Positions 6,208 to 42,954 of a stretch of DNA of 44,087 bases are shown piece by piece; position 1 is the first letter of the stretch; each line of letters begins with the position of its first letter. Made by a program: the position numbers and the translations under genes. The stretch lies in NCBI GenBank assembly GCA_002269645.1, contig NIVC01004498.1:1-44087 (forward strand). Direction: 5' to 3'. The notes below the pieces were generated by a model that did no database searches, was not told the origin of the DNA, and saw nothing but the letters and a program-made list of their open reading frames with translations. Source of the stretch: Macrostomum lignano (Eukaryota).

Positions 6208-6352
6208 CAGAGCAGTCGCTGAAAATGCAGTCATGTAAACTAATAGTACTCGTAACTGATATTAAGCTAGGTAAACTTCAGAAGTAAAAAAAATATTAGA
6301 TCAGAAGACAAAAAAAACAAATTGAAAGTTTCATACAGGTATTAATACGAGC

Positions 6353-15212: not shown

Positions 15213-15213
15213 G

Positions 15214-22555: not shown

Positions 22556-22929
22556 AGCCACATGTTTGATTAAACAACTTAAAGTCAAAGTCAAACATAC
22601 CGAAACTTCTTGTGTAATTAATCAGCTCGCAAGCAAAAAATAAATAAGACAGAGATAGCACACTTGACAAATTCAATAAAATTAAATTGCTACAAAAATG
22701 CTTAGAGTGTTGCTTAAAAACAGCAATATAAAAGCATTAGGGAACTGAATACTCGTAAAATTAAATTAAACAACACGTTTACCTATAGATATACAACAAT
22801 ATTGTTTTAAGGTTTTAACCAAGGTTTTAAGCGGAAATTTTAATCAAGCGAATATTTAGCGATACATTGTAAATAATAAAATCTTGGCACAATTTACAAG
22901 AATATGAAAGGGTAGCGGAGGCGTGACCA

Positions 22930-23294: not shown

Positions 23295-26200
23295 TCAGCC
23301 AGTGTGCATCACTCTCAACAGGGCCAGAGACACGTCCGGCAGCCGTTGCCTTGGCAACAGGTCGCTAACAGTCAGCTGCAACATGGTAGGCGGTTGACGA
23401 CGCAGCAGCCGCACCAGCAAGCGGACAGGCCGGCGACACCGGCTGCTCTCCAGGTGGTAGCGCAGCACCTCGGACAGGTAGGACCCGTCGCCGCCACCTC
23501 CGCTATTTTCATCCCAGCAGCGTCGATAAGCCACAGCGTGATTGGCACTGGCTACGCTATCAACAAACCTATTTGGGAATCCTAGCAGGCGGCAGATCGT
23601 GTAGAAGCCTCGACAGGACAGACTAGCTGATTGAGTGCCATCCTGAAGCAGGACGAAGGCTTCCGCAAGCGGTGGCTGCGCCGTTAAAGATGACGGGTGG
23701 AACTGGAAAATATGGAACAGAAGATTTTATCATTTCTGTCTTTGACTTGCTACTGAACAGTAGGAATAAAATAATTTTTGCACAAAAATTTAAATTTTCG
23801 AATTTGCGAGAAATTTGCATTACAATGCGCGGATATACTACTAATTACGCTTACTAAATTAAGTAGAATATGAGGTTCTATTTACTTATTTAGTGATTTT
23901 GAGTGTCATATACCCCTAAAGATTTTTAGTAAGTGGTTTACCGATATGTATCGAAAAAGCCATAGAATCCATCGCCTCACCTGAAATCGACAGACCGCGG
24001 ACAGAAAGCAGTCCAACTGAAATACTCGACCTTCGTCAAACCAGTTAGCCAAACCGGACTCAACAGCTGATGTCAAATTGAATTCAATTAAAGCTCCGAT
24101 GCTGTCAAAGTATTCACCGCTATGAAGGTTGTCAGCAACGGCTGCTGTTTGACGCGTTGGTCGACCATTGGCCGATCGGGTCACCTAGTAAAAGTGGCGG
24201 TTAATCGCTTTTATACATTGCATGCGCAACTAGCTACTCTCATCAGCAGCATGGTAACGTTTCCACCTCGAAACCAAAAATGATTCCAAATTCGCGGCTC
24301 TTTTTACAATTCTGCGACTCACGTGATGCGCTCGTGACTGATGACAATAATAATAATTAATAATTGATTACACCTGCCCCAATTGGGCTAGATGTGCAAC
24401 CAACAGCTCAGCCGCAGCTATTGCGCGGCGCATCTGAAGGCTGCGTACGGCTGTTCAGTCCAAGGAGGGGGGGGGGTCGCTACACACACAGCCTCAATTA
24501 CCTCAGCTAATGCTGTCACCCATTTTACAGCTGAGTGAACTGAAGCAACGCAAGGTGTCTTGCTCAAGGACACAAATTGTTCCGAGTAGGATCGGGATCG
24601 AAGCCCCCGACCTTCAAGTCGTAAGTCCGACGCTCTAACCACTAGGCTACAGCCCCGTGTGACTTAACAGTCGCTTCTGTCACATTGCAGTTGTTTTAGT
24701 CGTTAAAAAGTCACAAGAGTCGCTAGAGTCACCAGTGAGTTGCTTGCAATGACTCTTTTGCAATTTTAGCGGTCACGGTTAACGTTTTCAATGGTCGAGG
24801 ACAACGGGCGTGGTGCTGGTGTGAATTGCACCAATTGGGGCTGAGAGGAACTTTACCATGCTTCTGATTGTATATACTGGTAGGTATGTAGTAGTGACAC
24901 CAACCGACAACAGATGAATGGTAGGATTGATATCGGAGCAGACGCAGAGCAACTCCGCAGATTTTTTAGCATTCGCAGCCCCATTTTCAGCGTCATTGAA
25001 CTGGCGCCTGCTGACATTCAACAGTAGGACATCTTCGGCGTGGAAATTCGAACTAGCCAAATGCTGAATCATCTCTAAACGTCTAATATTCGATAGCGGA
25101 GCGCAGAATTGCACTCTAGCCGCTTCTTCGTCGGCTATCGGATCACCAATTAGAAGCCAAGCGTTGCCATGGCAACCAGATCTATCGTTGCCGAAGTCCA
25201 ATAGTCGTCCGCGTAGAGCAAACAAGCGTAGATGCCCGGATACCCGAGCGCGACTGGACGTCAGCCAATCAGATTGGCGCAATTGAACACACTCTACGCT
25301 GATTGGTCGCCGCTTTAAACTAATTAATAAAGGAGTTGCCGATGTCAGACAGTCAGTTTCGCTGGTTGCTAAGGAACTAGCTGCCAGATGTTGATCGGTA
25401 GAAATCTCGTCAGAGACAATTCTATATGTACCAGATGGCAGCAGCAGTTCGCGCAGCACTGAAGCTGTGTAAAAACGCAAACGAATAGATAAGGTAAGAG
25501 AAAATTTCAATGGAAATATATTGGCCACTGGGCTTCGTTAGGATTAAAGAGGCTTAGGAGGTCTTAATTCTGAGGGATCTAGAGTTCTAGACAGTTCCCA
25601 TATATAGCGATCTCTAGAGTCAACAGACAATCCTCATATAGTGATCTGGAGTCTACAGACAATCCTCATAGTGATCTATAGTCTACAGACAATCCTCATA
25701 GTGATCTATAGTCTACAGACAATCCTCATAGTGATCTATAGTCTACAGACAATCCTCATAAAGTGATCAATAGTCTACAGACAATCCTCATAGTGATCTA
25801 TAGTCTACAGACAATCCTCATAGTGATCTATAGTCTACAGACAATCCTCATAAAGTGATCAATAGTCTACAGACAATCCTCATAGTGATCTATAGTCTAC
25901 AGACAATCCTCATATAGTGATCTAGAGTCTACAGACAATCCTCATATAGTGATCTAGAGTCTACAGACAATCTTTATATAGTGATCTAGAGTCTACAGAC
26001 AATCCTCATATAGTGATCTAGAGTCTACAGACAATCCTCATATAGTGATCTAGAGTCTACAGACAATCCTCATATAGTGATCTAGAGTCTACAGACAATC
26101 CTCATATAGTGATCTAGAGTCTACAGACAATCCTCATATAGTGATCTAGAGTCTACAGACAATCCTCATATAGTGATCTAGAGTCTACAGACAATCCTCA

Positions 26201-28287
26201 TATAGTGATCTAGAGTCTACAGACAATCTTTATATAGTGATCCAGGGTGTACAGACAATCCTCCTAGGCTCTATAGGACTTAAAGACAATACTAAATTAT
26301 AATTAATTTTAATGTTACAAAAAGAACGCAGCCATCTTACCGCTTCCACTCATTTCCATCAGCACTTTAATCTGTTTGCTACGATTTTCATTAGCATCAC
26401 CATCACTACTAGCTGCTTTAAGCGTTCCAGCCAGACTGAATGAGCCAACGCTAACACTGTGACAAGAGTTCACAGTCAGTTCAATTGAATCGGTTCCAAG
26501 ACTTCGCCGACGCTGTCTCTGATTAATCTTCGAGGCCACAGCCGTAGCTAAATGAGAACACCGAACTAACAGCAGCATAGAGCCATCCCAATCGATTAAG
26601 CTAGCCCTAACTATCGGCAATTTCAACACAACTAAATGCACCATTCGAGCTGATAGATTCAATCGAACTGGACCGTCGTGAATCAGTCGCATAGCCACAG
26701 ACGAATTACTATTAGTAGTAAACAAGTCTAGTCGCAGTCTTTCTCCAATAGGATCGAATGCTATTCGCCGACCAATAAGAATGACGGAATTTGAACTATC
26801 CGAAGCCAAGGACAGGCCCGTTGGTATAGTTGTTGCCAATAGCAACTGCACTGGATTAATAGCATCCGATAATCTGTGCAATTTAACAAATTTTTCCACT
26901 AATTGTTTATGATACTGACGTCGGTAGGCAAGAATCCTTGTCTCTTTCTCCGGTATTGCCGACATTGATAGCAGAGCTTTGCAAAGTGCCACTAGAAGGC
27001 CTCGATCTGATGACCTATCAATAGACTGAAGCGTTATTGACCAGGCCAATAGGCGAATAATAGTCGAACTATTGTCATCAATTTCACTGTTGAATAATAA
27101 TTCACTAATTAACCAATGTTGGTTATTGATTTTTGAATGACTGTCATTTCCTTGACTATCATTTTCGTCAATATGTTTTGGACAATGCAGACTAGTGTAC
27201 ACGTAGGCAACTATCACTGTTGCTATCCGATTGTTAGTTGCAATTTTTATTGCCTGACAAGCTGATCCAGTGTACAGGTGAGCATTCCTAAGCTGAATTA
27301 TTCGGCTAACAATGCTTCGAGACAATGATGTCAATGTTGATGGGAATAGCGCTAGCAAGGCTGGCTCACCTGTTATAAGTGCAAAAAGGGGAGATGGGTG
27401 ACAAGGTAGACAAAAAAGGGGAGATAGGAAAGAAAAGTGGAGAGAGGGTAGACGGGAGAGGAGTTAGTAGAAATGGTGTAGAAAGGAGAGAATAGATTCG
27501 GGAAGGGGAGATGGGAGAAGGGAAAGTAGGGAGAGTGGCCCTTGTTTCTCCGCTGTGTCAACAGACTAACCTGCAGCTAAGGAAAGTGGAGGGGAGAGAA
27601 TAGAGATTGAAGATATATATCATGGTTTCAAGAATCAAGCATATAAACATTAGAAAAAACAAACTATAAAGTGCATCTTTTGAAGTGCATATCAGCTCAT
27701 CAAAGCGCAGTCTTACCTGGAGAGTCAGCCACACTGCCTTCGCAGTGATCTGATAGAATATTGACATAGGCAAATCCTTCAGTCAGAGACAATGACGTCA
27801 CTTTCGCATTGATAAATCTTCGATAAGTAGAGCATTGTCCAACAATGCAGTTACAGTTTCCAGCCTCACTGCTACTAGAGGAAATGCCAATTTGCAAAGA
27901 AGCTGGTGCTACCAGATTTTGTAAACAGTCTGGGAATTTTGCAGCATTATTATGACCACTATTAAGCTCAAGTCGCCAACAGCCATACTCAGAACCTGAA
28001 GCCATTGTTAGCTTCACCGGCTTGGTAGGCAATCCATCAGACAAATCTAGCCAATTTCCAATTGCCAGTTTATTGTAACATTGCACTAATTGTTGATAAC
28101 AATCATTGTAACTATTCAGTTGGTTGCTACCACATGTTACAATAACATTCTCTGTTCGACAGAAACAATATCCTGCACTATTGACTCTAGTTGGTTGCAA
28201 TTTAAGTACCAAACAGCATGGCTTCAATTTTATTGGATGAGACACAGCAACAAGATAGCCAGATGGACCACAGGGCTGTAAATGCAA
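23295..28287 (-). CDS. CTC1: Divergent CST complex subunit CTC1-like OB-fold protein, 5' incomplete (exons 28287-27717, 27369-26341, 25464-24857, 24184-23981, 23702-23295; about 939 aa)
   Basis: Five exons join through GT-AG introns with matching phases (1,1,0,0). By-eye similarity to recalled human CTC1: VLLQDGTQSASLSCRG vs LLVEDGTAEAVVTCRN, IIQLRNAHL vs CLQLQDVHL, GYLVAVSHPIK vs GSLVRLSALVK. The exon structure is well supported; the identity is moderate. Confidence 0.62.
24346..24656 (-). mobile_element. tRNA-derived SINE with a CORE-like central domain
   Basis: Minus strand: GGGGCTGTAGCCTAGTGGTTAGAGCG (A-box), GGCTTCGATCCC (B-box-like), TGTGTCCTTGAGCAAGACAC...CTCAGCTGTAAAATGGGT (CORE/MIR-like), then an (ATT)n tail. 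Confidence 0.8.
25615..26265. repeat. 30/32-bp intronic minisatellite
   Basis: Unit GTGATCTAGAGTCTACAGACAATCCTCATATA and a shorter variant. Confidence 0.96.
27385..27600. repeat. GA-rich low-complexity intronic tract
   Basis: Purine-rich plus strand (pyrimidine-rich on the gene strand). Confidence 0.7.
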
Positions 28288-31259: not shown

Positions 31260-31972
31260 TGTGCATAGGTTGTTTATGGCCCAAGATATTGCAAGAATAC
31301 GCCAAGCAGATTTAGCAAGTGCAGCACAATAAAAAATCATCTATGCAGCAAACAAAAATCACCATGAATCTTAACAAGATGCCTGCACCAAGCAGATCTG
31401 CAAGGTGTTTAGCAGGTGGGGCTTGAATGACATCCTAAACTGCCTGGTTGCTGAGGATGAAAGCTGGCTCTACCTGGATGGCAAGGGCAGCAAAGCAGAC
31501 AATTGCTGCTGGCTAGGAGCTGGGGACTCTAGGGCAACTGTGACCAGAAAGTCCATCTTGGACTAGAAGACCATGCTGCTAGTAGCCTTCATGCCAAATG
31601 AACAAGTCTCCATCCGCACAACTCCATTGAACTTTGTCTGGCACAGTGGCGACCTCTGGCACACTCTCCAGTCAAATCCAATTTACCTAGACGAGGTTTT
31701 GTGGTAGATGGAAACCATATGGCTTCACACCTGAAGGCAGTTTCTAAATTTCTGCTTTATGGCAAGTGAATATGCTCTGACAGAGTCCCTACAGCTTGGA
31801 CTTCAACTTTTCCTGTTCCTGTTCAAGATTCCTGTTCAAATGGCTGAAAGCTGACTTTTCCAAGAAGAGTTTTGCAACCTACAAAGAGGTCAAACAGGCT
31901 GCATTGCACTGGTTATGGCAGTTGGAGGAAAAACATCTGTAGGCTGAGGTGGACAAGCTGTATGTGGTATAT
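31260..31972 (+). mobile_element. Second decayed mariner-like transposase remnant, ending at the LTR element insertion
   Basis: LVAEDESWLY (IVTGDETW-like) at 31444-31473, KTMLLVAF, SPYSLD and EVKQAALHWL. Confidence 0.7.
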
Positions 31973-32836
31973 TGTAGAGTGTTCTACCTCCCGTTAAAGG
32001 AGGAAAAAGGAAGATAATCGTATAATACTACTATAAGTAAGTAAGTACACGCATGTGCGCCTAAGCTTTGAATGAATCACGCTACCAGAAAAAGATGTTA
32101 CCAGAATAATACGCCATGAGCCATTTTCCCCTTTTAGCGCAACACGTGAATTGTCATGATACTATTTTGGATCAAAAACTTGTCTATAAATACAAGCGAT
32201 CTGAAGCGGTACCGGAGCCATTCTCCCCACGGAAGAGGAGCGCTCCGAAGAGGAAGCCTTAGGAGGACTTCCTGATCTACCAAGTCAATCGAGACTCGGT
32301 CGAGTTGTTGCGGTAAGCCTTCCTTATTTGCGCCCGTTGTGTTAGAGACGTCTCGCTCAAGTCTATTGAGACTTGAGTCTAATTGAGTCTGTTGAGACTC
32401 TTGAGTCTGTTTAGACTCCATTGGTTGCAGTCTCCAGAAGGACTGCCCCTGATAGATCTTAGAGGACTATCAGTGGTTTCCGGAGCTATACCTAGAGTGC
32501 ATAGAGGCACTGCTAGAAGAAGGAGGCTTAATTTAGACCGCAGTTTGGCGCAGGGTACCCATTGTTGCTACGAGGCCTCTGATTGGTCCTGACGGAAGAT
32601 ACCGGCCGGAAGAACTTATCAGAAGTACAAGAGGAACCAGGACCAGAGCAACTGAAGAATCAAGGCGCCTGATCTACGAGATCTACTGACAAGTTCCTAG
32701 CGAGAACTACTCAAGAAATTCAAATCCGGATTAAAGGTAATTGAATACCTTCGTTTGACTTACTGGGTTGCCTAGCTGTTGAGCTAGAAGTGATTGTTCC
32801 TTGATTATCGAAAGTCGGGTAATAAGGAACACATCA
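31973..32836 (+). repeat. 5' LTR (864 bp)
   Basis: TGTAGAGTG...CACATCA, directly repeated at 41718-42580. Confidence 0.97.
32185..32192 (+). promoter_or_regulatory. Candidate LTR TATA box
   Basis: TATAAATA about 210 nt into the LTR, followed by an ATG-free leader. Confidence 0.5.
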
Positions 32837-32838
32837 AT

Positions 32839-32856
32839 TGGTGATCTCGCCCTCTC
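32839..32856 (+). other. Primer binding site (possibly tRNA-Trp-like, imperfect)
   Basis: TGGTGATCTCGCCC two nt after the LTR end; TGG is complementary to the tRNA CCA. Confidence 0.6.
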
Positions 32857-33552
32857 GGCACTACTCAAACCTTGAGCAATAGCCTGGCCAAGCTATTGTA
32901 AAGTGACGACAGAGCGACTTCATTAATTTTGCGCGCACGTGTTAGAGTTAACACTTTTTAAGTCCGTTACGTTTTGAAACTCGAGTAAAATTTGGTGTAC
33001 AGGTTTGAGCACCTGTCAAATTTGAGTACAGTTTGAGCACGCGTGTTAAAATTTTGTTTTGACGAGCTCGAGCAAGTGTGAGTTTAAAACAAAACCGAAA
33101 TTAACTTCGTCGGTACACTGAAAACAAACCAAAAATAAAAAGAATCGTCGACGCAAAACAAACAAAAAATAACTGAAACATTTTGCCGGCACAAAAACTA
33201 AAACAAAACCGAAATTAATTGAAACTTCGTGGAGAGCAGAGTTAATTGACAAAAGAGAGAGAGTCAAAGAAGAGAAGAAAGACTTTGCAAAGCAAGAAGA
33301 CAAGTCCACTTCAACTTGAAGATACACTTTGCGGGACGCCGCATAAGTGCGAAATCAGCAAGCGAACAGAACAAGTTCATTTGAGGACAACCAGTGGCAG
33401 CAAGCCACACCGCATCCGAGGCCAGCGAATAACAAATCGACACCACAAGGCAATTCGTTACAGTCGAGGTTTATTCCGAGGCAAACACCACACTGGACGA
33501 TCCGTTACAAATCGATCCAGATCTTGAACTACCGTTCTACCCTATCAACAAC

Positions 33553-36183
33553 ATGGCGCGGCGCAATCCAACGGTACACAGAGACATCAAAGAAACGGTC
33601 GGTACTTTCTCGATGGAGAAAGATTTTAACACATTTGTCGACCATTTTGACCTGGTATGTAGGGAATACAACCTACAAAATCCAGAGAAGGCACAGCTGC
33701 TGCCACCTCTTCTCCAAGGTACTGCGCGAGAAATTTACGGCAAGCTGGATGCGGCAACACAGCAAAATTATCCAGCACTAATCATTCAACTGCGCGCGCA
33801 TTTCAACCGTTGCGGCACAAACAGATCAGTGCTGCTGCACAAGTTGCATAACAGAAGGATGCAAGCAACAGAATCCTTCCTCGCCTTTGTGGACGATATC
33901 CGCCAGATAATTAAGGCACTGCATCAGCCACCGCTGCAAGCTGCGGACCAACCACCACTGGGAGCGGCAGAATTGGCCGCCAGAGAAAGACAACGATTGA
34001 TGGATCGTGAACAAAACCTCATCCTGCACGTAATAAACAACGCACAGCCGTCACTTCGGGATAGACTTTTGCGTGAAAATATCGAAACCGAAGAAGACCT
34101 TTTGCGTTGCGGAATGCAATGGGAAGCCAGTGCCCCATTAATGACGACAGGCAACAATGAAGTGCAGAAACTGACGCAGCAACTAAACAAGTTAATGCAG
34201 CACCAGACAGCTGCTATCGCCGAACAAAAAAGACGAAATGAACAAGCCTCAGCCAGATGTTACTACTGCGGACAAGAAGGACATTATCAGATTAATTGTC
34301 CTCATTGGTCAACAAGATACGACAAGCCGCGACAGATATTCAACAATCAGAAGCCGCAGAAACCATGGCAGCAATATCAAAATCGCCAACAACAAGGCAT
34401 AAGACGCTTCGGAAATGATAGACGCTTCGGAAATAATGACCGCTCCGGAAATGATGGCCGCTTCGGAAACGAAGGCCGCTTCAGAAGTAATGGCTACAGG
34501 CCACGCAACGTCAGATACACACAAAGACAGCCGACGCAAGCAATGCCACGATACGCGAATGCCATCACGTACACACCGGAAAATGAACAGCAAGAACAGC
34601 AAGTGTTCACAATTGACGACTTGGAAATGGACTTCACAGTCCCGGAACTTGACATCAGCTTGATCGAAAAGAAGACGACGCACGAGGACAACACTGACAA
34701 CACAGAAGAGACGAATGAAACCGAAATGATCAAATTAAAAGAGACCACCGGAGACAGCAGAGAAAACAGGAAGAAAGTAAATCACAAGACAAGGGAGGAG
34801 GCGGAGAGCGACATCGGCAACGAAGAAAAGATGAAAACCGGCGAAGAAAACAACTATGAATCGACAACAGTGGATGACGACAAAACGAGCATGAAAGACA
34901 AAGAAATGAAAGAAGAAGAAGAATGTAGAAGTTACGGCAACGACCACGACTGCGAGGTGCGTGATGACACGAACGACTACCAAGCCGAAAGAGGAATGCA
35001 GGAAGAACCGAGAGCGGAGAATCTAAGTTCCGACAGCGATCAAGGCTACGAAATACAATGGAAAGATGAAGAAATGGAAAAAGAACAGGTGAAAGAAAAG
35101 CCGAGTTCCGACAGCGACGAATGCTACGAGATCCGATACAAACGAAATGGTGAAGCCTATATTCAAACGGTCGACTACAAGACAGAGAAAAGATACCAAA
35201 CGCAATGGAGTGAAACAACGGAAACATCGGAAGAAGCTGCAGACGAAGATAATGAAATAACCAAAAAGCAAAGCGAATCAGAAGCCTTCCGCCTGGATCA
35301 GCCAATGGAACAACCGAAAGAATATGATGCGGACATGGAAGATAACGAATGGCGATCGCAGCCAATGCCAGCAAGGACAACGGCAAAATCCAAGAAGTGG
35401 AAAAACTGGCTATTCTGGATCATCGTGATACTACTGATAGCAGTAGTCGCCAAAGCAACGGCAACGGAAAAGCCAATTCCAATGATTTGTCCAACGGATG
35501 CGCATATCCAACCGATGATCTACAAGATACCAACCGACATCAAATGCAGTTACTTCAAGACAAACCAGACAAAACCAAAGAAGATTACACTCGATCTCTA
35601 CAAGGCTAACATCAAGAAGCATCGACAACACGGGATAGTATGCTTCAGAGACAAGCACCTGGTGGAAAAAGTTTGGCGCGGACAATGGAACCGGATCCGA
35701 TTTAAACAACATGAGCTACATGTGTCGCACGCGGAATGCCTACAATGGAATCAAACACTATTTTCAAAGGATGGTGAACTGGAACCAGATGAGAAGGTCG
35801 GCAACGCACAGCTGTTCAGAACAAAGAATTCAGCCAACGGTCGATATATTCACTTCTTCGGAAAATGGAAAGAATATATGGCACGCAACAGCTACTTGAT
35901 CAGAAATATTCCATTCTACTACAATCCGTACGAGAAAATGGAATCGTTACAGCTGCAACTAAGCGAATGTCGATACAGTGAAGGATGGTGTCCAACGCCG
36001 ATTCTACGGAAGGAAGAACTACACAGTCTACCACTGAGTCCAACATATCATCAAGACTATCGATGGCAGATTGAGCACAGAGCACAATCACACTATGAGG
36101 AACCGTACAAATCACGACAATATTTCTTCGCATGGAAAGTAGAGCCGGAAATTGACTGCAAGCTTCAAAAGTATCACAAGTGA
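33553..36183 (+). CDS. gag: Gag (capsid-like, CCHC knuckle) + acidic spacer + internal signal peptide + N-terminal half of Env
   Basis: Ty3-type Gag, CYYCGQEGHYQINC at 34258-34299, basic-hydrophobic-AxA segment KSKKWKNWLFWIIVILLIAVVAKATA at about 35386-35463, then a Cys-rich ectodomain. Confidence 0.9.
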   Translation: MARRNPTVHRDIKETVGTFSMEKDFNTFVDHFDLVCREYNLQNPEKAQLLPPLLQGTAREIYGKLDAATQQNYPALIIQLRAHFNRCGTNRSVLLHKLHNRRMQATESFLAFVDDIRQIIKALHQPPLQAADQPPLGAAELAARERQRLMDREQNLILHVINNAQPSLRDRLLRENIETEEDLLRCGMQWEASAPLMTTGNNEVQKLTQQLNKLMQHQTAAIAEQKRRNEQASARCYYCGQEGHYQINCPHWSTRYDKPRQIFNNQKPQKPWQQYQNRQQQGIRRFGNDRRFGNNDRSGNDGRFGNEGRFRSNGYRPRNVRYTQRQPTQAMPRYANAITYTPENEQQEQQVFTIDDLEMDFTVPELDISLIEKKTTHEDNTDNTEETNETEMIKLKETTGDSRENRKKVNHKTREEAESDIGNEEKMKTGEENNYESTTVDDDKTSMKDKEMKEEEECRSYGNDHDCEVRDDTNDYQAERGMQEEPRAENLSSDSDQGYEIQWKDEEMEKEQVKEKPSSDSDECYEIRYKRNGEAYIQTVDYKTEKRYQTQWSETTETSEEAADEDNEITKKQSESEAFRLDQPMEQPKEYDADMEDNEWRSQPMPARTTAKSKKWKNWLFWIIVILLIAVVAKATATEKPIPMICPTDAHIQPMIYKIPTDIKCSYFKTNQTKPKKITLDLYKANIKKHRQHGIVCFRDKHLVEKVWRGQWNRIRFKQHELHVSHAECLQWNQTLFSKDGELEPDEKVGNAQLFRTKNSANGRYIHFFGKWKEYMARNSYLIRNIPFYYNPYEKMESLQLQLSECRYSEGWCPTPILRKEELHSLPLSPTYHQDYRWQIEHRAQSHYEEPYKSRQYFFAWKVEPEIDCKLQKYHK

Positions 36184-36416
36184 AGGAGGACTACTGTCGA
36201 ATACGTTTTTGGCAAAGCAGGAGACTTGGCCTTGACGTTTCAAAAGAAGCCGGTTGAACAGGAACTCAAATGCAAGGATACGGACAAGACGCTATTCATC
36301 TCGGAGCAAGAAATACCAGTCTACGTGAAGGATGGTGACAAACAAACCTTCTGGCAATCATAAACGGAACATATCAGCAACAAGAGAGACAACGACGCGA
36401 CATAGAATGTCCACGA
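36184..36416 (+). pseudogene. env: Env middle segment bridging the two ORFs (after the in-frame TGA; frameshift near 36335)
   Basis: Frame 1 continues RRTTVEYVFGKAGDLALTF...C...LFISEQEIPVYV. Frame 3 is open from 36339 (QTNLLAIINGTYQQQERQRRDIECPRL) into the 36417 ORF. Confidence 0.75.
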
Positions 36417-39400
36417 TTGGTGTCAAACCGACTGCTGTCAGCAAAGATCACGGCGCTGGATCACAACCTGCATAACCAGCTTAACCACTTACATCGGTCA
36501 CTGGTCCAGCTAACTTGCAAAATGCACGCAATCAACTTAAATTATGCCAGACAAAACTACTATGTCAACCCTACGATGACTTTTCGTAAAATCACCGGAA
36601 TGACGAACGTTTTGGCAGTTCCAATATACGAGCATCTGTTGATATACAAGTGCACGCCGATACAGCACTTTAACATCTTGCCGTCAAACACGTCAACAAC
36701 CTGCTACGATAAGCCAAGGATTGAAGCGTTCTACGAAGGAAAACGAATTCAGGGATTCTTGGACACGGTACACAACATCATCGTTGGCACCGCAATACCG
36801 AGACCTTGCACCACGGCAGTAAACTACTATCAACTGGACAATGCACTACACGTCATCAAAACAACTGGAACGACAGCAAACGTCACAGAACCGGAAGTAA
36901 TCGTCGACGAAAACTACGACATGGAGGATTTGAAAATCCGATTCAACAGAACGAAGTATACGCCATTCGCCGATATCCAACTTGACGAGATAACACCAGG
37001 ATGGACGATCAACGACTTCTTGCAAGCGTTCATCACCCAACGCAAGATGATTCACCAGCTGTTCACAAGAAAGGACAAAGGAACCGGGACAGGAAGATTT
37101 CCCGTCCTTGTTTCAATGGACAGCGCCATCAAATCATTTTGGACAAATAGCTTCTGGGAGCTGCTCAATGGAAGAGGCAGTCTCTATCAAGGATTCATCT
37201 TCTACGGTGCTTGCATTGTGTGGATTGTCACGGCAATCTTCATCATTTCATCGATCGTACGGTGCTTCAGTCAAACTTGTCCAAGAGCTAAGAAGACAGT
37301 GAATGCCATAATGCAAAGAACGACAACGGAAAGCGACAACAGTTTAGAACTAACAGAAACTGCACATTGTGAGGTTCAAGGGCAACCGACACTAGCAACG
37401 CGGCTATATCCATCGATTCCGACAACACCAACGGCACCAAGGATACAACCACCCAACTATCAAGCAGAACAGCACGAGCCAAAATGGCCGGAAAACTACG
37501 TCTGTACGCTACACGCCGAGATTGGCAAAGCAATGGCTCAGGTCATTGTCAACAACTTGCCATGTCGAGCACTACTGGATTCAGGCAGCTCGATCACAGT
37601 CATCTCGCAACAATTATGCAACAAGCTACGACTCGCGGTACGACCAGCAGCAATCGCAGTTGCAGGAGCAGGAGGACATTCACTCAACATCCTAGGAAAA
37701 GCAGATATCGACTTGAAAATTGCTAATAAACAGCTGACGGTCCCGACGTACATCATCGACAGACTACCAAACCAAGACGTCATCGTTGGAATCGACACGT
37801 TCAAGCAGCTTCAACTACCATTGACCTTCGACTTCAACAAGCAAACGTTTAGGATCGACACGGTGGAGCAACCGCTGATCAACCAGATTCGAGTACTACC
37901 GAAAGTAACTCTGCAGCAAGATGTCATTATCCAGCCTGAAAGCGCATGCTGGGTCAGAGCGAAAACGACCAGCGCGGCAGATGAAGCAATGATATTTGAT
38001 CCACACAGGAGAGTCACGGCAAAACATCAAATCATGATGCCTACGGCACTAGTGCTGGTTGCAAAGGATAAGCAACTGCCAGTACAAATCTTCAACCCGA
38101 ACACAGAAACGGTTCATCTACGACAAGGAATGTGCATCGGTCATCTCAACACCCAAGCATCGGTTATGCTGATTGAACAAGCGACTCCACGACTAACAGA
38201 GGAAGAATTTCAAAAGAAGATCAATTTGGATGACAGCCCGATTACGGAACAGCAAAAGAGGAAAGTTCGACAGCTGTTGTGGAAGTACAACGAAGCCTTC
38301 TGCCATCATGATTACGACATCGGACGAGCCAAGGACATCAAACAGGAAATCAAACTTCTGCCGCACACGGAACCAATTCAGTGCAAGCCGTACCCGATCG
38401 CCAAGCATCTGCAACAACACTTTGACGAAATCATCGATAAAATGCTAAAGCACGGCATCATCAGCAAAGCTATTTCGGCTTACTCCTCACCGTGCCTACT
38501 GGTACAGAAGAAGGAGACAAACGAAAGACGACTCGTATGCGACTTCAGACTGTTGAACAAGTACATACCGACGGATCAGCAAAGCCTACCGAAGATCTCC
38601 GAACTACTAGCAAAGCTCAACACGGCAAAATTGTTCACGGTGTTCGACCTACGTCATGGATTTTGGCAAATTGAAATCGAGAAAGAGTCACGACAGTACA
38701 CGGCTTTCAAAACCTACAATGGACAAGTATACGAGTACAATCGATCGCCGATGGGACTTAGCAACAGCCCAGCAACGATGAGTCGACTAACAGCATACAT
38801 GCTAGCAGGATGCACGAACCTGCTGCACTATGTCGACGACATTTTAGCCTACGGAGAGGATTTCGAGCGACTCTACGAAGCTACGGAGAAGGCCCTAGCG
38901 CTCATTCAACGCCAAGGTCTGAAGCTACAACCAACTAAATGCAAATTCTTCCGAGACAACGTGCGTTACCTGGGACATCAGGTGACAGCCAAAGGAATCT
39001 CACCGGACCCAGACAACGTGGAAAAGGTGAAGAAGTTTCCTACGCCAACCAGTATAACGAAGGTCCAATCATTCCTTGGACTTGCGCAATACTTCAGGAA
39101 GTTCTTACCTAACTTCGCAAAGACAGCAAAGCCACTGTACGACCTGCTCAAGTTCGACAAATGGAAGCAAGACAACTGGACACAGAGACAACAGGAAAGT
39201 TTCGACGAAATCAAACGACAGCTGACATCAGACGCACTGCTACAGCATCCGGACTTCGACAAGCCCTTCATCATCGAGACAGACGCCTCAGGAACGGGAC
39301 TCGGAGCAGTCCTACTACAGGAAACCGAGGACAAGAAGGAACGACCTATTGCTTACGTCAGTCGAGCACTCAAACCAAATGAGACAAAGTGGTCAGCTAC

Positions 39401-41042
39401 GGAACGAGAGCTACTAGGAGTCTTGTTCGCCCTGCGACAGTTTCATTACTACATCTATGGTTCTCCAATACAGACGATAGTACGCACGGATCATGCACCA
39501 TTGACCTACGTCGTAACTACAAAAGGACAGACCAACAACCGACTCATCAGGATGACACTCAAGATCCAGGATTACAACTACAAACTCGTCTACAAACCAG
39601 GAATTACCAACAAAGCCGCGGACGCCCTGTCAAGAGCCTATGAAGTCAACGCCATTCATCCAATCCCTAACATCAAGGAGTTGGTGGATGAAACCGAGCG
39701 CGACAACTTCTACCAAGCGGTTAAAGACGACGACAAGAACATCAAACTCAGTCCCATGGAACGAAAATTCCTACGCAAGCAACGACAACACCTAACAATC
39801 AATAAGTCACGGCTCTACTGGATGAGCGACAATAAACCCAAGATCTACATACCATATTCGTTTCGGCAAGCAATTCTCAACGAGCTACACGACAACCCAC
39901 TCGCTGGACACCTGTCGGCAGCAAAGACCATCGCGAGAGTGGAACAATACTACTTTTGGCCAACTATGTACGGCGACATCAAGCAGTATTGCAACAACTG
40001 CCATTCATGTGCTGCATCAAAGACAGGACGACGACAGAAACCGCAGCTACAGTCCATTCCGAAGTCGACTACAATGGACTGTCTAAGCATCGACATCACC
40101 GGACCGCTACCACCGAGCTGTCTCCAGGGCATCGCCTACACCTACATTCTAACCGCCTTGGATATCTTCTCGAAGTTTGCTATCGCCATACCGATACCGG
40201 ACATCACAGCTCAGACAGTGGCAATGAGTTTCTTCAACGAAATCATTTGCAAGTACGGCACGCCGAAGAACCTCACATCGGACAACGGATCGCAGTTTAC
40301 ATCGCAACTGTTTCAGCAAGTCGTAAGGATTCTCAACATTACGCAGATCTACACATCGACCTACAATCCGAAGGCAAACATGGTTGAACGGTTTCACCGC
40401 AACCTGCACGAGATGATTACACATTTCGCGCACCAACAGCCGGAAGACTGGATCATCTACCTGCAATCTGTAACAATGGCCTACAACAGCGCTATTCATC
40501 GATCAACGGACAATACGCCATTCTTCCTAATGTTTGGACGAGACTTCCAACCGCCGAATCTGCTCGCACAGCAATTGCTACCATCGCAGTACGTGGAAGT
40601 ACCGACTTCCATTCAGAAATTCGTCACGCAACTACACCTCGCATGGAAGATCGCCAAGCACAACATTGACAACCAGGTGGCTCTGACCACCGGCAACGAC
40701 GCGAGATCGACAACCCTGACGGCCGGCGACATCGTCTACCTACACTACCCGCCACAGCAGACGCATAAACATGCACAGAAGTACAAAGGACCCTATCGAG
40801 TGGTCCAACTAACGTCACCAACAACGGCACGCCTGGCTAATGTACAAGATCCACATCAGCACCAGTTCTACGTACACATTCATCGACTAAAGAAGATCAA
40901 CACTGACACAGCGACGTTTCTACCGACATTAGACAACGCTGATCGCACGCGTTCAACGAACCGCCACATCGCGACGAAGCACGAGGAGACTCAAACGACA
41001 GATGTGAGCCAGCCACATGGCTACAACCTACGACCACGCTAG
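36417..41042 (+). CDS. pol: C-terminal Env (coiled coil, TM) fused to Pol (protease, RT, RNase H, integrase)
   Basis: TM FIFYGACIVWIVTAIFIISSIV at 37194-37259, LLDSGS at about 37572-37589, YVDD at 38829-38840, IETDASG, HDNPLAGH...CHSC, IDITGP/DNGS/VERFHR and GPY. Confidence 0.97.
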   Translation: MVSNRLLSAKITALDHNLHNQLNHLHRSLVQLTCKMHAINLNYARQNYYVNPTMTFRKITGMTNVLAVPIYEHLLIYKCTPIQHFNILPSNTSTTCYDKPRIEAFYEGKRIQGFLDTVHNIIVGTAIPRPCTTAVNYYQLDNALHVIKTTGTTANVTEPEVIVDENYDMEDLKIRFNRTKYTPFADIQLDEITPGWTINDFLQAFITQRKMIHQLFTRKDKGTGTGRFPVLVSMDSAIKSFWTNSFWELLNGRGSLYQGFIFYGACIVWIVTAIFIISSIVRCFSQTCPRAKKTVNAIMQRTTTESDNSLELTETAHCEVQGQPTLATRLYPSIPTTPTAPRIQPPNYQAEQHEPKWPENYVCTLHAEIGKAMAQVIVNNLPCRALLDSGSSITVISQQLCNKLRLAVRPAAIAVAGAGGHSLNILGKADIDLKIANKQLTVPTYIIDRLPNQDVIVGIDTFKQLQLPLTFDFNKQTFRIDTVEQPLINQIRVLPKVTLQQDVIIQPESACWVRAKTTSAADEAMIFDPHRRVTAKHQIMMPTALVLVAKDKQLPVQIFNPNTETVHLRQGMCIGHLNTQASVMLIEQATPRLTEEEFQKKINLDDSPITEQQKRKVRQLLWKYNEAFCHHDYDIGRAKDIKQEIKLLPHTEPIQCKPYPIAKHLQQHFDEIIDKMLKHGIISKAISAYSSPCLLVQKKETNERRLVCDFRLLNKYIPTDQQSLPKISELLAKLNTAKLFTVFDLRHGFWQIEIEKESRQYTAFKTYNGQVYEYNRSPMGLSNSPATMSRLTAYMLAGCTNLLHYVDDILAYGEDFERLYEATEKALALIQRQGLKLQPTKCKFFRDNVRYLGHQVTAKGISPDPDNVEKVKKFPTPTSITKVQSFLGLAQYFRKFLPNFAKTAKPLYDLLKFDKWKQDNWTQRQQESFDEIKRQLTSDALLQHPDFDKPFIIETDASGTGLGAVLLQETEDKKERPIAYVSRALKPNETKWSATERELLGVLFALRQFHYYIYGSPIQTIVRTDHAPLTYVVTTKGQTNNRLIRMTLKIQDYNYKLVYKPGITNKAADALSRAYEVNAIHPIPNIKELVDETERDNFYQAVKDDDKNIKLSPMERKFLRKQRQHLTINKSRLYWMSDNKPKIYIPYSFRQAILNELHDNPLAGHLSAAKTIARVEQYYFWPTMYGDIKQYCNNCHSCAASKTGRRQKPQLQSIPKSTTMDCLSIDITGPLPPSCLQGIAYTYILTALDIFSKFAIAIPIPDITAQTVAMSFFNEIICKYGTPKNLTSDNGSQFTSQLFQQVVRILNITQIYTSTYNPKANMVERFHRNLHEMITHFAHQQPEDWIIYLQSVTMAYNSAIHRSTDNTPFFLMFGRDFQPPNLLAQQLLPSQYVEVPTSIQKFVTQLHLAWKIAKHNIDNQVALTTGNDARSTTLTAGDIVYLHYPPQQTHKHAQKYKGPYRVVQLTSPTTARLANVQDPHQHQFYVHIHRLKKINTDTATFLPTLDNADRTRSTNRHIATKHEETQTTDVSQPHGYNLRPR

Positions 41043-41162
41043 AGTTTAGAGAACAACCCCGTGTAGTGACCGGGATAAAGAATAGCACTACAGCTTCGCA
41101 AGCTTGTCGTAAAAGGCGACTAATCCGAGCGACACAAAGACAGCGACAAATTGACGACAATT

Positions 41163-41537
41163 ATGGGCAACGCACTGTCAAAACAGGCGCCCCAGCCTCA
41201 GCAGCTATATGACTGCCCGATATGTTTAACTGATGACTTGGCTGTCAAGCCACCGACTATTTGCATCAACGAACATAAAGTTTGCGGACAATGTTTAAGC
41301 GATTCACATTATATTCAGCCATGGCAGAATTGTCCCCTCTGTAGAGATAGTTTGCGACAATGTGCCTATTGTTATTCTTGGCGCACGTTTCAATATTGTA
41401 ACCACCAACATTTTATTTGCATGCACTGTTTGAAGCAAACCGCTAGTAGGGGCGTTATAGGATGCCCCTTATGTAATAGTATGCCGCGAGACTGCACGTT
41501 TCGAAAGTGGTGTCGGATCAAACCTGATGCCACTTGA
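41163..41537 (+). CDS. Accessory tandem C3HC4 RING protein with a predicted N-myristoylation signal (124 aa)
   Basis: MGNALSK; RING1 CPIC..CINEHKVCGQC..CPLC; RING2 CAYC..CNHQHFICMHC..CPLC. Confidence 0.85.
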   Translation: MGNALSKQAPQPQQLYDCPICLTDDLAVKPPTICINEHKVCGQCLSDSHYIQPWQNCPLCRDSLRQCAYCYSWRTFQYCNHQHFICMHCLKQTASRGVIGCPLCNSMPRDCTFRKWCRIKPDAT

Positions 41538-41702
41538 TGTCTACGCGATATTCGAGTTTTGACCGCAATATGTACTGAAAAGTTTTTAGAGTTTTGACCA
41601 AACCCTCGCTTCACTAGACGCGCACAAAATCAATTGTTTATTTCCTATATTAACTGATCACCACAGAATTTTATTGTTAAAACTCGGGACGAGTTTTTTC
41701 GT

Positions 41703-41714
41703 AAAAAAGGGAGA
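41703..41714 (+). other. Polypurine tract
   Basis: AAAAAAGGGAGA three nt before the 3' LTR. Confidence 0.85.
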
Positions 41715-41717
41715 TTT

Positions 41718-42580
41718 TGTAGAGTGTTCTACCTCCCGTTAAAAAAGGAAAAAGAAGATAATCGTATAATACTACTATAAGTAAGTAAGTACACGCATGT
41801 GCGCCTAAGCTTTGAATGAATCACGCTACCAGAAAAAGATGTTACCAGAATAATACGCCATGAGCCATTTTCCCCTTTTAGCGCAACACGTGAATTGTCA
41901 TGATACTATTTTGGATCAAAAACTTGTCTATAAATACAAGCGATCTGAAGCGGTACCGGAGCCATTCTCCCCACGGAAGAGGAGCGCTCCGAAGAGGAAG
42001 CCTTAGGAGGACTTCCTGATCTACCAAGTCAATCGAGACTCGGTCGAGTTGTTGCGGTAAGCCTTCCTTATTTGCGCCCGTTGTGTTAGAGACGTCTCGC
42101 TCAAGTCTATTGAGACTTGAGTCTAATTGAGTCTGTTGAGACTCTTGAGTCTGTTTAGACTCCATTGGTTGCAGTCTCCAGAAGGACTGCCCCTGATAGA
42201 TCTTAGAGGACTATCAGTGGTTTCCGGAGCTATACCTAGAGTGCATAGAGGCACTGCTAGAAGAAGGAGGCTTAATTTAGACCGCAGTTTGGCGCAGGGT
42301 ACCCATTGTTGCTACGAGGCCTCTGATTGGTCCTGACGGAAGATACCGGCCGGAAGAACTTATCGGAAGTACAAGAGGAACCAGGACCAGAGCAACTGAA
42401 GAATCAAGGCGCCTGATCTACGAGATCTACTGACAAGTTCCTAGCGAGAACTACTCAAGAAATTCAAATCCGGATTAAAGGTAATTGAATACCTTCGTTT
42501 GACTTACTGGGTTGCCTAGCTGTTGAGCTAGAAGTGATTGTTCCTTGATTATCGAAAGTCGGGTAATAAGGAACACATCA
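41718..42580 (+). repeat. 3' LTR (863 bp)
   Basis: About 4 differences from the 5' LTR seen by eye. Confidence 0.97.
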
Positions 42581-42954
42581 ATATGCGCATATAAAGTATA
42601 TTTCATTTCACACACATTGGCCATAGACACTGCTTCTATTAACCCTGCGTTCTAAAGCTAATATAAGGAGAGCAAATATAAAGGAAATGAATGTTAACAT
42701 CGGCATGGCAAGAGCCCGCTACCAAGCTTGAGATTACTAACTATAATTCACCTAGACTTTGAGTTGGTAACGGAAGTTGGATGTAACACTGTATGAGCAC
42801 TGCCAAAGGGTGATTGATATTGGGGGATTCTATGTTGTTGAGTGGTATAGTTTTCTTCATTAGCGATTGCAAGTTTGTCTGCTTTCACATCAGTGACATT
42901 ACTTATGACACACGCGAAGTAATAGATATTCCCCTCAAATAGAAAATATTTTTA

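What the first reader, a model, noticed from the sequence alone, without database searches (positions are those of the whole stretch)
41163..41537. Retroelement accessory gene: myristoylated tandem-RING protein, an arenavirus Z-like analogue
An intact 124-aa ORF lies between integrase and the PPT, where env usually sits. MGNALSK fits the N-myristoylation consensus (Gly2, Ser6, Lys7), and two complete C3HC4 RINGs follow. The second has a short first loop like the arenavirus Z RING. The sequence looks more T-rich than the A-rich pol, suggesting capture. Arenavirus Z is a Gly2-myristoylated RING matrix protein that drives budding. This Gag has no myristoylation signal, so the small protein could supply matrix function, or be a membrane-anchored E3 ligase that counters host defence or ubiquitylates cargo for ESCRT. 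Similarity to Z may be convergent.
Basis: partly seen in the sequence, partly recalled or inferred. Interest (0 to 1): 0.9.

Follow-up and report, generated by a model that had tools for sequence, protein, structure and literature searches.

The report
Retroelement-encoded tandem-RING accessory protein
A young endogenous retrovirus-like element of the flatworm Macrostomum lignano carries, after its integrase, a small conserved gene for a protein with two RING zinc fingers, most likely a ubiquitin ligase. No RING gene of this kind turned up in the retroelement literature I searched, but it is not a relative of the arenavirus Z protein.

Summary
Window 41163-41537 (+) is an intact 124-codon ORF between the pol stop (41042) and the polypurine tract (41703-41714). 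It starts MGNALSK and carries two complete C3HC4 RING patterns six residues apart.

It belongs to a young Ty3/gypsy-type element of Macrostomum lignano (LTRs 99.5% identical, 4-bp target duplication). A class III env-like gene already sits between gag and pol.

The ORF is a real, selected gene:
- All six sibling loci fetched have it at the same place, five of them open.
- dN/dS is 0.10-0.16 in this frame only (pol 0.045).
- An exhaustive search found a small, unnamed family. One member lies 120 nt after an integrase 64% identical to this one.
- All 16 zinc ligands, plus a Pro and an Arg in RING1, are invariant across the family.

The arenavirus Z reading is not supported beyond "myristoylation motif plus RING". 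Gly2 occurs only in the M. lignano copies, there are two RINGs, and there are no late-domain motifs. Z is an insignificant hit; ordinary RING E3 ligases score better.

Best reading: an element-encoded accessory RING E3-type protein, probably made from a spliced subgenomic RNA, and in this lineage probably membrane-anchored. No such gene turned up in the retroelement literature searched.

The parts
31969..31972 (+). Target-site duplication ATAT, 5' copy (3' copy at 42581-42584)
   Evidence: Read from the flanks printed
31973..32836 (+). 5' LTR (TG...CA). Contains a TATA-like box at 32184-32193 and a consensus 5' splice site G|GTAAG, with the intron starting at 32313.
   Evidence: 99.5% identical to the 3' LTR (3 mismatches and 1 gap in 864). 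No ATG between the TATA box and the donor. The LTR-leader part of the M. lignano protein P0089 matches up to this donor, and its RING protein follows.
32839..32856 (+). Putative primer-binding site (starts TGG, 2 nt after the LTR)
   Evidence: Read from sequence. The priming tRNA was not identified.
33553..35304 (+). gag: CCHC zinc knuckle (from 34258), followed by a long acidic low-complexity region. No Gly2.
   Evidence: Pfam zf-CCHC E=3.6e-4. The 3' bound is taken as the point where the env-pol ORF of L001 begins.
35305..37300 (+). env-like class III fusion glycoprotein gene between gag and pol: signal/TM near 35398, membrane anchor near 37191. It is broken in the window by frameshifting indels. 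Its front part reads in the gag frame and its rear part in the pol frame.
   Evidence: Pfam Monjiviricetes_fusion E=2.7e-5, below the curated cutoff. The same family is precomputed for the relatives P0002 and P0005. Against the uninterrupted 1914-aa env-pol ORF of L001, the alignment shows 4 frameshifting indels, 2 in-frame indels and 0 stops. The GAG-ENV-POL order is known for flatworm errantivirus-like elements (PMC13524379).
37500..41042 (+). pol: protease, reverse transcriptase, RNase H, integrase. Open throughout.
   Evidence: Pfam hits. 100% identical to GenBank ALD16272.1, 'retrovirus-related polyprotein', Macrostomum lignano.
41043..41162 (+). pol-RING spacer. It has no ATG and four stops in the pol/RING frame. 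A nearly invariant block lies at 41057-41085, with small predicted hairpins. It is the candidate region for the 3' splice site.
   Evidence: The block is conserved in L007 although synonymous sites between the two elements are saturated.
41163..41537 (+). Tandem-RING accessory ORF, 124 aa
   Evidence: Present in L001-L006. dN/dS 0.10-0.16. AlphaFold2 with the family alignment gives pLDDT 82.7.
41166..41183 (+). N-myristoylation-type motif G2-N-A-L-S-K7
   Evidence: Pattern read. Identical in all 7 M. lignano copies, with a synonymous difference in L001. Absent from non-M. lignano relatives.
41214..41342 (+). RING1 (C18-C60). It carries the features expected of an E2-binding RING: Ile20, Pro58, and Arg61 directly after the eighth ligand.
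   Evidence: All ligands plus P58 and R61 are invariant in 8/8 family sequences; Ile/Val at position 20 in 6/8. Profile hits to TRIM21, SIAH1 and RING1B RINGs.
41361..41474 (+). RING2 (C67-C104): short first loop of 8 residues, and no conserved Arg after the last ligand
   Evidence: Profile hits to BRE1, MAT1 and CBL RINGs. RING1 of relatives cross-matches RING2 of the window at E of 1e-5 to 1e-6, which points to an internal duplication.
41538..41702 (+). 3' untranslated region. No significant remnant of the C-terminal domain carried by longer family members.
   Evidence: The tblastn match of P0086 runs on to 41636. However, a profile of the C-terminal domain scores no better in this frame than in other frames or in shuffles.
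41703..41714 (+). Polypurine tract AAAAAAGGGAGA
41718..42580 (+). 3' LTR

Best explanation
The ORF is a bona fide accessory gene of a GAG-ENV-POL errantivirus-like Ty3/gypsy element of Macrostomum lignano. It encodes a small protein made of two fused RING domains.

Most likely mechanism:
1. The protein acts as an element-encoded RING-type E3 ubiquitin ligase.
2. RING1 recruits a charged E2. It keeps the loop-1 Ile, the loop-2 Pro and the Arg directly after the last ligand. That these three residues mark E2-activating RINGs is my own knowledge of RING E3 structures, not a tool result.
3. RING2, which arose by internal duplication and lacks that Arg, acts as a structural partner. This would resemble the inactive half of RING heterodimers such as RING1B-BMI1 or BRCA1-BARD1.
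4. The protein is probably translated from a subgenomic mRNA spliced from a consensus donor in the LTR leader to an acceptor in the 120-nt spacer. That would make the 41163 ATG the first AUG.
5. In the M. lignano lineage the protein is a short form. It lacks the roughly 100-aa C-terminal domain of most relatives and has an N-terminal extension with a myristoylation motif. It is therefore probably membrane-anchored, where it would ubiquitylate host or element proteins to the element's benefit.

Shown: existence, position, inheritance, purifying selection, ligand conservation, RING fold.
Inferred: E3 activity, division of labour between the RINGs, splicing, myristoylation, target.
For: Copies:
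- The identical ORF is present in L002, L003 and L006.
- A 144-aa variant is present in L004 and L005.
- A diverged copy is present in L001. All sit about 120 nt after pol.
- Only L006 shares the window's flank, so the others are separate insertions.

Selection:
- dN/dS is 0.14, 0.10 and 0.16, with Fisher p of 9e-3, 1e-4 and 1e-7.
- Four of the other five frames give 1.2-1.8. The codon-aligned antisense frame gives 0.30. pol gives 0.045.

Family:
- The exhaustive search gave six hits, five of them family members. The best, P0086, has E=1.3e-24 and 46% identity.
- P0086 lies 120 nt after an integrase 64% identical to the window's.
- Sixteen ligands plus P58 and R61 are invariant among 8 sequences that are 25-45% identical. 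The spacing is fixed, including the 6-residue linker.
- Relatives carry two such genes back to back.

Fold:
- The AlphaFold2 model has pLDDT 82.7.
- Foldseek and profile hits are all RING E3 domains: Ring1B, UHRF1, RNF125, TRAF6, BRE1, TRIM21 and viral ICP0-type proteins.

Splicing:
- There is no ATG between the LTR TATA box and the G|GTAAG donor, nor in the spacer.
- The M. lignano protein A0A1I8G201 (P0089) joins an LTR-leader translation, homologous up to exactly that donor, to a RING protein of this family.
- In L008 and L010 an AG lies directly before the ATG. In L010 it follows a polypyrimidine tract.

Myristoylation motif: kept in 7 of 7 M. lignano copies.
Against: - There is no direct evidence of transcription, splicing, translation, lipidation or E3 activity.
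- The window protein alone is below Pfam's RING cutoffs (E=0.003).
- The ORF is absent from the protein collections searched, and no gene was called on it in the deposited M. lignano annotation of the sibling loci.
- In L001 the ORF is broken (one premature stop, two ligand positions substituted) although that copy's env-pol ORF is open. L005 has one ligand position substituted.
- The window form lacks the C-terminal domain that most relatives carry. That domain may hold the substrate-binding function.
- No AG lies directly before the window's ATG, and the acceptor is not identified.
- P0089 may be a gene model without RNA support.
- dN/dS is about 3.5 times that of pol.
Confidence: 0.55

Rival explanations
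1. Arenavirus Z-like matrix analogue. The myristoylated RING protein lines the membrane and drives or organises budding of enveloped particles. It would stand in for the missing membrane-binding signal of Gag, with the RINGs acting as assembly scaffolds rather than as a ligase.
For: - The Gly2 motif is present and conserved within M. lignano.
- Gag lacks Gly2.
- The element encodes an envelope-type glycoprotein, so a membrane step is expected.
- RING2 alone has Z as its top PDB sequence hit, with similar loop lengths.
Against: - The Z hit is not significant (E=0.038). It drops to E=0.15 with the family profile, below many cellular E3 RINGs.
- Z is not among the top 50 structural matches in PDB or BFVD.
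- There are two RINGs, not one.
- There are no PTAP, PPxY or YPxL motifs in the protein.
- Gly2 is absent from all relatives outside M. lignano, so matrix function cannot be what has kept the family.
- RING1 keeps the residues typical of E2-activating RINGs.
Confidence: 0.08
2. A decaying remnant. An ancestral roughly 200-aa accessory gene has lost its C-terminal domain in M. lignano. The remaining 124-codon ORF is open only because the copies are young.
For: - Most relatives are 206-214 aa with a C-terminal domain that the window ORF lacks.
- The stop codon differs between variants (124 vs 144 aa).
- L001 has a premature stop plus ligand substitutions while its env-pol is open. L005 has a ligand substitution.
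Against: - Frame-specific dN/dS is 0.10-0.16 in comparisons with dS up to 0.68, far deeper than the age of the young copies.
- Five of seven copies keep all 16 ligands, and six of seven are open.
- Another short form (P0087, 130 aa) exists in a different lineage.
- The N-terminal extension is conserved, with 5 synonymous and 2 non-synonymous codon changes.
Confidence: 0.15
3. A zinc-finger regulator rather than a ligase. The cross-brace domains would bind nucleic acid or a host protein (for example in RNA export, silencing or transcription) without transferring ubiquitin, as in MAT1-type or some viral RING proteins.
For: - RING2 matches MAT1 and other non-canonical RINGs weakly.
- Pfam scores are sub-threshold.
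- No activity data exist.
Against: - The RING1 features most diagnostic of E2 engagement are invariant or nearly so across the family: Pro58 and Arg61 in 8/8 sequences, Ile/Val20 in 6/8.
- The best profile and fold hits are active E3 RINGs.
Confidence: 0.15
4. A recently transduced fragment of a host RING gene with no role for the element.
For: The base composition differs from gag-pol.
Against: - The same gene sits at the same place in an element with 64% integrase identity, with the same compositional contrast.
- The only other M. lignano relative found (P0089) is itself joined to an LTR leader.
- The exhaustive search found no closer cellular homologue.
- Purifying selection is evident.
Confidence: 0.02

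Closest known systems
Arenavirus Z protein
   Same: Small size, a Gly2 myristoylation-type N-terminus, a C3HC4 RING with a short first loop, and being encoded by an enveloped reverse- or RNA-genome agent. It is the top, but insignificant, PDB sequence hit for RING2 alone.
   Different: This protein has two RINGs, not one, and no late-domain motifs. There is no significant sequence or fold match. The myristoylation motif is confined to one lineage of the family. RING1 keeps E2-activating residues.
RING E3 ligases encoded by large DNA viruses (herpesvirus ICP0 type, giant-virus and baculovirus/entomopoxvirus RING and IAP proteins)
   Same: A parasite-encoded RING domain with E3-type features. 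These proteins appear among the BFVD fold matches. Their usual role is ubiquitylation of host factors (established knowledge).
   Different: Those are DNA-virus proteins, much larger or with other domains, and have a single RING. Matches here are at the generic RING level only (E of 1e-3 to 1e-1, one RING aligned).
Lentiviral accessory proteins that redirect cellular ubiquitin ligases (Vif, Vpr/Vpx, Vpu)
   Same: Small accessory genes outside gag-pol-env, expressed from spliced RNAs, that work through the ubiquitin system (established knowledge). They evolve faster than pol.
   Different: They contain no RING and borrow cellular cullin-RING ligases. Here the element would carry the ligase domain itself. 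There is no homology.
Extra ORFs captured by LTR retrotransposons (for example ORF3s of bdelloid rotifer elements, PMC5408684), and GAG-ENV-POL errantivirus-like elements of flatworms, nematodes and bryozoans (PMC13524379)
   Same: An additional ORF after pol in a Ty3/gypsy-type element. The backbone, with a class III env between gag and pol, matches the flatworm elements described.
   Different: Neither paper mentions a RING ORF: 0 occurrences of 'RING' in PMC13524379 and 0 of 'RING finger' in PMC5408684.
Heterodimeric RING pairs (RING1B-BMI1, BRCA1-BARD1)
   Same: One RING has E2-activating residues and is paired with one that lacks them. Ring1B-Bmi1 and BRCA1 structures are among the best hits.
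   Different: Here the two RINGs are in one chain with a fixed 6-residue linker. No solved or predicted structure matched both domains at once (TM-score on the query about 0.3).

Membership tests
RING-type (C3HC4) zinc finger | Eight Cys/His ligands in C-x2-C-x(9-39)-C-x(1-3)-H-x(2-3)-C-x2-C-x(4-48)-C-x2-C spacing | tested here: met
   RING1 fits exactly. RING2 fits except for a first loop of 8 residues, one short of the classical minimum. All 16 ligands are invariant in the family.
RING-type (C3HC4) zinc finger | Significant match to RING profiles or structures | tested here: met
   The window protein alone is below Pfam cutoffs (E=0.003). The family profile hits the TRIM21 RING at 4e-5 and the BRE1 RING at 3.4e-4. 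The model has pLDDT 82.7, and its fold matches are RING domains at Foldseek probability 0.9-1.0.
RING E3 ubiquitin ligase (active) | E2-contact residues: a hydrophobic residue in loop 1, Pro in loop 2, and a basic 'linchpin' residue after the last ligand | tested here: met
   RING1: Ile/Val20 in 6/8, Pro58 in 8/8, Arg61 in 8/8. RING2: no conserved basic residue (N/G/K/L). This is a sequence-level test only.
RING E3 ubiquitin ligase (active) | Ubiquitin transfer with an E2 | not testable with these tools
   No biochemical data.
Arenavirus Z protein | Sequence or structural homology to Z | tested here: not met
   Z scores E=0.15 with the family profile and E=0.038 with RING2 alone. It is absent from the top 50 Foldseek matches in PDB and BFVD.
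Arenavirus Z protein | Gly2 N-myristoylation | tested here: inconclusive
   The motif is present in all 7 M. lignano copies but absent from every other family member. Lipidation itself was not tested.
Arenavirus Z protein | A single central RING and C-terminal late-domain motifs | tested here: not met
   There are two RINGs. No P[TS]AP, PPxY or YPxnL motif is present in the protein.
RBR (RING-between-RING) ligases | An IBR domain between RING1 and RING2 | tested here: not met
   The linker is 6 residues in all members. No RBR or IBR Pfam hit was found.
TRIM proteins | RING followed by a B-box and a coiled coil | tested here: not met
   The second domain has RING spacing and matches BRE1, MAT1 and CBL RINGs. 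There is no B-box or coiled-coil hit, and the protein ends 20 residues after RING2.
Accessory gene of an LTR retroelement | Lies inside the LTRs, is inherited with the element across insertions and relatives, and is under purifying selection | tested here: met
Accessory gene of an LTR retroelement | Expressed from its own (spliced) mRNA | tested here: inconclusive
   There is a consensus donor in the LTR, no upstream ATG, and the P0089 leader-RING junction falls at that donor. No RNA data were available, and the acceptor is not identified.
GAG-ENV-POL errantivirus-like Ty3/gypsy elements (PMC13524379) | LTRs, PBS and PPT; CCHC gag; a class III env between gag and pol; pol order PR-RT-RH-IN | tested here: met
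   In the window the env-like gene is interrupted by frameshifting indels.

The most novel reading that the evidence does not exclude
This would be the first family of RING ubiquitin ligases encoded by a retroelement. The fused RING pair is carried, sometimes in two copies, by enveloped errantivirus-like elements of flatworms. It would let the element ubiquitylate host or its own proteins directly, rather than borrowing a host ligase. In M. lignano the protein would have exchanged a C-terminal targeting domain for an N-terminal lipid anchor, moving the ligase to membranes where the element's glycoprotein and particles meet.
Probability: 0.35. Interest if true: 0.8.

Novelty: new variant of a known kind. 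Interest (0 to 1): 0.65.

Why it matters
To my knowledge, retroviruses and LTR retroelements manipulate the ubiquitin system only by hijacking host ligases, and RING ligases of their own are known only from large DNA viruses.

A conserved, fast-evolving, sometimes duplicated RING gene in invertebrate endogenous retrovirus-like elements would add a new class of retroelement accessory function. It would also give a concrete handle on element-host conflict in a tractable flatworm model.

The gene goes unannotated: GenBank annotates only the polyprotein, and the ORF is missing from the protein collections searched. Similar accessory genes may therefore be missed routinely.

Tried and rejected
- Word-indexed homologue searches with the protein and with the family alignment found nothing. 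The exhaustive search was needed.
- The exact-sequence look-ups found no record of the 124-aa product, and the cluster look-up none of it or the 128-aa TTG-start form.
- A metagenome scan found nothing.
- Single-sequence AlphaFold2 was useless (pLDDT 36).
- Remnant of the family's C-terminal domain after the stop: a tblastn match of P0086 runs on to 41636. A profile of that domain scores -0.4 bits, no better than other frames, and 36 of 500 shuffles reach it. Rejected as unproven.
- Read-through from pol: the ORF is in the pol frame, but four in-frame stops lie in the spacer (read). Rejected.
- RBR and TRIM architectures: rejected (see membership tests).
- P0090, a hit with an N-terminal membrane segment and two separated RINGs, matches RING1 only. 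It was treated as an unrelated RING protein.
- Rfam found nothing in 40900-42600.
- The organisms behind the Logan runs that hold the relatives could not be identified.
- Supplementary tables of the two most relevant papers are not held.

Full report
**1. The observation**

Window 41163-41537 (+) is an open 124-codon frame, MGNALSK...KPDAT, ending in TGA.
- It contains two complete C3HC4 patterns: C18...C60 and C67...C104, separated by six residues.
- The ATG has A at -3 and G at +4.
- It lies 120 nt after the pol stop (41040-41042) and upstream of the polypurine tract (41703-41714). The 3' LTR starts at 41718.
- The compositional remark is correct. AT skew is -0.02 in the ORF, against a minimum of +0.10 in any 375-nt window of gag-pol. 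A protein with about 15% Cys needs many TGY codons, though, and the same contrast is seen in a distant relative.

**2. The element and its host**

The integrase-containing polyprotein is 100% identical to GenBank ALD16272.1, 'retrovirus-related polyprotein' of the flatworm Macrostomum lignano.

| Feature | Detail |
|---|---|
| Extent | 31973-42580 |
| LTRs | 864/863 nt, 99.5% identical, TG...CA ends |
| Target duplication | ATAT |
| Primer-binding site | TGG-initiated, 2 nt after the 5' LTR |
| gag | CCHC knuckle and a long acidic region |
| env-like gene | Two membrane segments, weak Pfam match to the Monjiviricetes class III fusion glycoprotein family |
| pol | PR-RT-RNase H-IN |

The env-like gene lies between gag and pol. 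This GAG-ENV-POL order with a gB-type class III envelope has been described for errantivirus-like Ty3/gypsy elements of Platyhelminthes, Nematoda and Bryozoa (PMC13524379). The same Pfam family is on record for the nearest pol relatives, from a root-knot nematode and a bee. So the slot after integrase is not an empty env slot.

In the window, gag and pol are open. The env-like gene is interrupted. Against the uninterrupted 1914-aa env-pol ORF of sibling L001, the alignment shows four frameshifting indels, two in-frame indels and no stop.

**3. Siblings**

Six loci of the M. lignano assembly GCA_002269645.1 were fetched through members of the pol cluster.
- L006 shares the window's flank. The others are separate insertions.
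- All six carry the ORF at the same place.

| Locus | State of the RING ORF |
|---|---|
| L002, L003, L006 | Identical to the window |
| L004 | 144 aa because the stop is a sense codon; 3 amino-acid changes |
| L005 | 144 aa for the same reason; 4 amino-acid changes, one of them at a zinc-ligand position |
| L001 | Divergent subfamily (pol about 10% different); one premature stop and two ligand positions substituted, although its env-pol ORF is open |

(All.) The copies are mosaics, as expected from recombination between co-packaged RNAs.

**4. Selection**

| Comparison | dN/dS | Fisher p |
|---|---|---|
| Window vs L004 | 0.14 | 9e-3 |
| Window vs L005 | 0.10 | 1e-4 |
| Window vs L001 (dS 0.68) | 0.16 | 1e-7 |

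- Four of the other five reading frames of the same block give 1.2-1.8. The codon-aligned antisense frame gives 0.30.
- pol gives 0.045 and gag 0.037.
- The ORF is therefore under frame-specific purifying selection, about 3.5-fold more relaxed than pol.
- The first 17 codons show five synonymous and two non-synonymous codon changes. MGNALSK itself is unchanged.

**5. A family**

The ORF is in none of the protein collections searched. An exhaustive HMMER search of 1.8 billion representatives gave six hits. Five of them form a family:
- P0086: 206 aa, E=1.3e-24, 46% identity.
- P0087: 130 aa.
- P0088: 208 aa.
- P0091, with its cluster-mate P0093: 214 and 229 aa.
- P0089: UniProt A0A1I8G201 of M. 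lignano, a 660-aa read-through translation that holds two further units.

Context of the relatives:
- P0086 lies 120 nt after an integrase 64% identical to the window's, on a 2-kb Logan contig.
- On another contig, the stop of a P0086-like ORF is followed directly by the ATG of P0088. Some elements therefore carry two such genes in tandem.

Conservation across eight sequences that are only 25-45% identical:
- All sixteen ligands, Pro58 and Arg61 are invariant.
- The ligand spacing and the six-residue linker are fixed.
- RING1 of relatives cross-matches RING2 of the window at E of 1e-5 to 1e-6, which points to an internal duplication.

Differences between family members:
- Most relatives have an extra C-terminal domain of about 100 aa. 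The window protein and P0087 lack it.
- No significant remnant of that domain follows the window's stop.
- None of the relatives outside M. lignano has Gly2. They start MT, MN, MA or MS, a few residues before the first Cys.

**6. Fold and likeness**

With the family alignment, AlphaFold2 gives pLDDT 82.7 and pTM 0.68, with two beta-beta-alpha RING units.

| Search | Result |
|---|---|
| Foldseek vs PDB | Ring1B, UHRF1, RNF125, TRAF6, RNF8, BRE1, TRIM RINGs; one RING aligned at a time |
| Foldseek vs BFVD | Giant-virus RING proteins, ICP0, IAP-type proteins; one RING aligned at a time |
| Either library, top 50 | No arenavirus Z |
| Family profile vs PDB sequences | RING1 matches TRIM21 at 4e-5; RING2 matches BRE1 at 3.4e-4; Z at E=0.15 |
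| RING2 alone vs PDB sequences | Z is the top hit at E=0.038, just ahead of TRIM32 (0.096) and BRE1 (0.25) |

The protein has no late-domain motifs.

**7. How it probably works**

- RING1 keeps the three residues that, in solved E2-E3 complexes, contact the E2 and hold E2~ubiquitin closed: a hydrophobic residue in loop 1, Pro in loop 2, and Arg right after the last ligand. This rests on established knowledge of RING E3s and was not tested here.
- RING2 lacks the Arg. I infer an intramolecular active-plus-support RING pair.

For expression, several observations point to a spliced subgenomic mRNA, as for other retroelement accessory genes:
- The LTR has a TATA-like box and, 129 nt on, a consensus G|GTAAG donor with no ATG between them.
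- The spacer also has no ATG.
- The LTR-leader translation inside P0089 matches the window's LTR up to exactly that donor and then continues with a RING protein.
- In L008 and L010 an AG directly precedes the ATG. In L010 it follows a polypyrimidine tract.
- The acceptor in the window is not identified. The spacer holds a block that is nearly invariant even in the distant L007, with small predicted hairpins.

In M. lignano, the loss of the C-terminal domain and the gain of an N-terminal extension with a myristoylation motif suggest that targeting moved from a protein-binding domain to a lipid anchor. The substrate is unknown.

**8. Novelty and verdict**

The backbone is a known kind of element, and RING ligases of large DNA viruses are known. 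Full-text searches found no RING gene in an LTR retroelement or retrovirus. The paper describing flatworm GAG-ENV-POL elements does not mention one.

- The finding is real and interesting as a new accessory-gene family.
- The Z-analogue interpretation is at most a loose functional analogy for one lineage.
- Confidence that this is a selected accessory gene is high.
- Confidence in ligase activity, splicing and myristoylation is moderate, because none of the three was observed directly.

Noticed in passing
window 35305-37300; L001 10001-15745: A class III (gB/G-type) env-like gene lies between gag and pol. In L001 it is fused in frame to pol as one 1914-aa ORF. In the window it is interrupted by frameshifting indels. 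The nearest pol relatives, from a root-knot nematode and a bee, carry the same Pfam family in 1924- and 1986-aa products.
   Followed up: partly
window 41057-41085 (within spacer 41043-41162): A non-coding block just after the pol stop is almost invariant between the window, L001 and the distant L007. RNAalifold predicts small hairpins, two pairs with compensatory changes (three sequences only). Rfam finds nothing. It could be a splice, export or translation signal for the RING gene.
   Followed up: partly
L012 1-160 and L007 1912-2070: In relatives, two tandem-RING genes lie back to back. The stop of the P0086-like ORF is directly followed by the ATG of the P0088 ORF.
   Followed up: partly
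P0089 (UniProt A0A1I8G201, M. lignano); window LTR 32140-32313: A second, 25-35% identical RING family exists in M. lignano. It is recorded as a 660-aa read-through of repeated [LTR leader + RING protein] units. This could reflect spliced-transcript-based gene models, or a tandem or non-autonomous LTR-RING arrangement. Its genomic locus could not be fetched.
   Followed up: partly
L002-L005 versus window (whole element): Sibling copies are mosaics. Single segments (5' LTR, front or rear of env, the RING region) differ by 2-15% while the rest is over 99% identical, as expected from recombination between subfamilies.
   Followed up: no
window 16802-17962 (-), 20137-20589 (-), 3569-4426 (-), 5452-6234 (-), about 11800-12100: Host gene fragments on the minus strand: a UFSP2-like peptidase C78, a COX5B-like protein, and M20 peptidase exons present in three repeated copies.
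   Followed up: no
window 1-570, 1950-3350, 14650-16280, 19650-20110, 21100-22660, 25580-26330: Many minisatellite arrays (periods 16, 20-24, 23, 32 and 43 nt) and a purine-only GGAGA-type array at the window's start.
   Followed up: no
window 31405-31942 (+): Short ORFs just 5' of the element resemble the end of a decayed mariner-type transposase. This is judged from memory of the family, not tested. The retroelement may have inserted next to, or into, an old DNA transposon.
   Followed up: no
window 33769-33780 (gag residue 73): A YPAL motif (YPxL type) in Gag is the only late-domain-like motif found in the element's gag reading frame as it stands. It may be chance.
   Followed up: no
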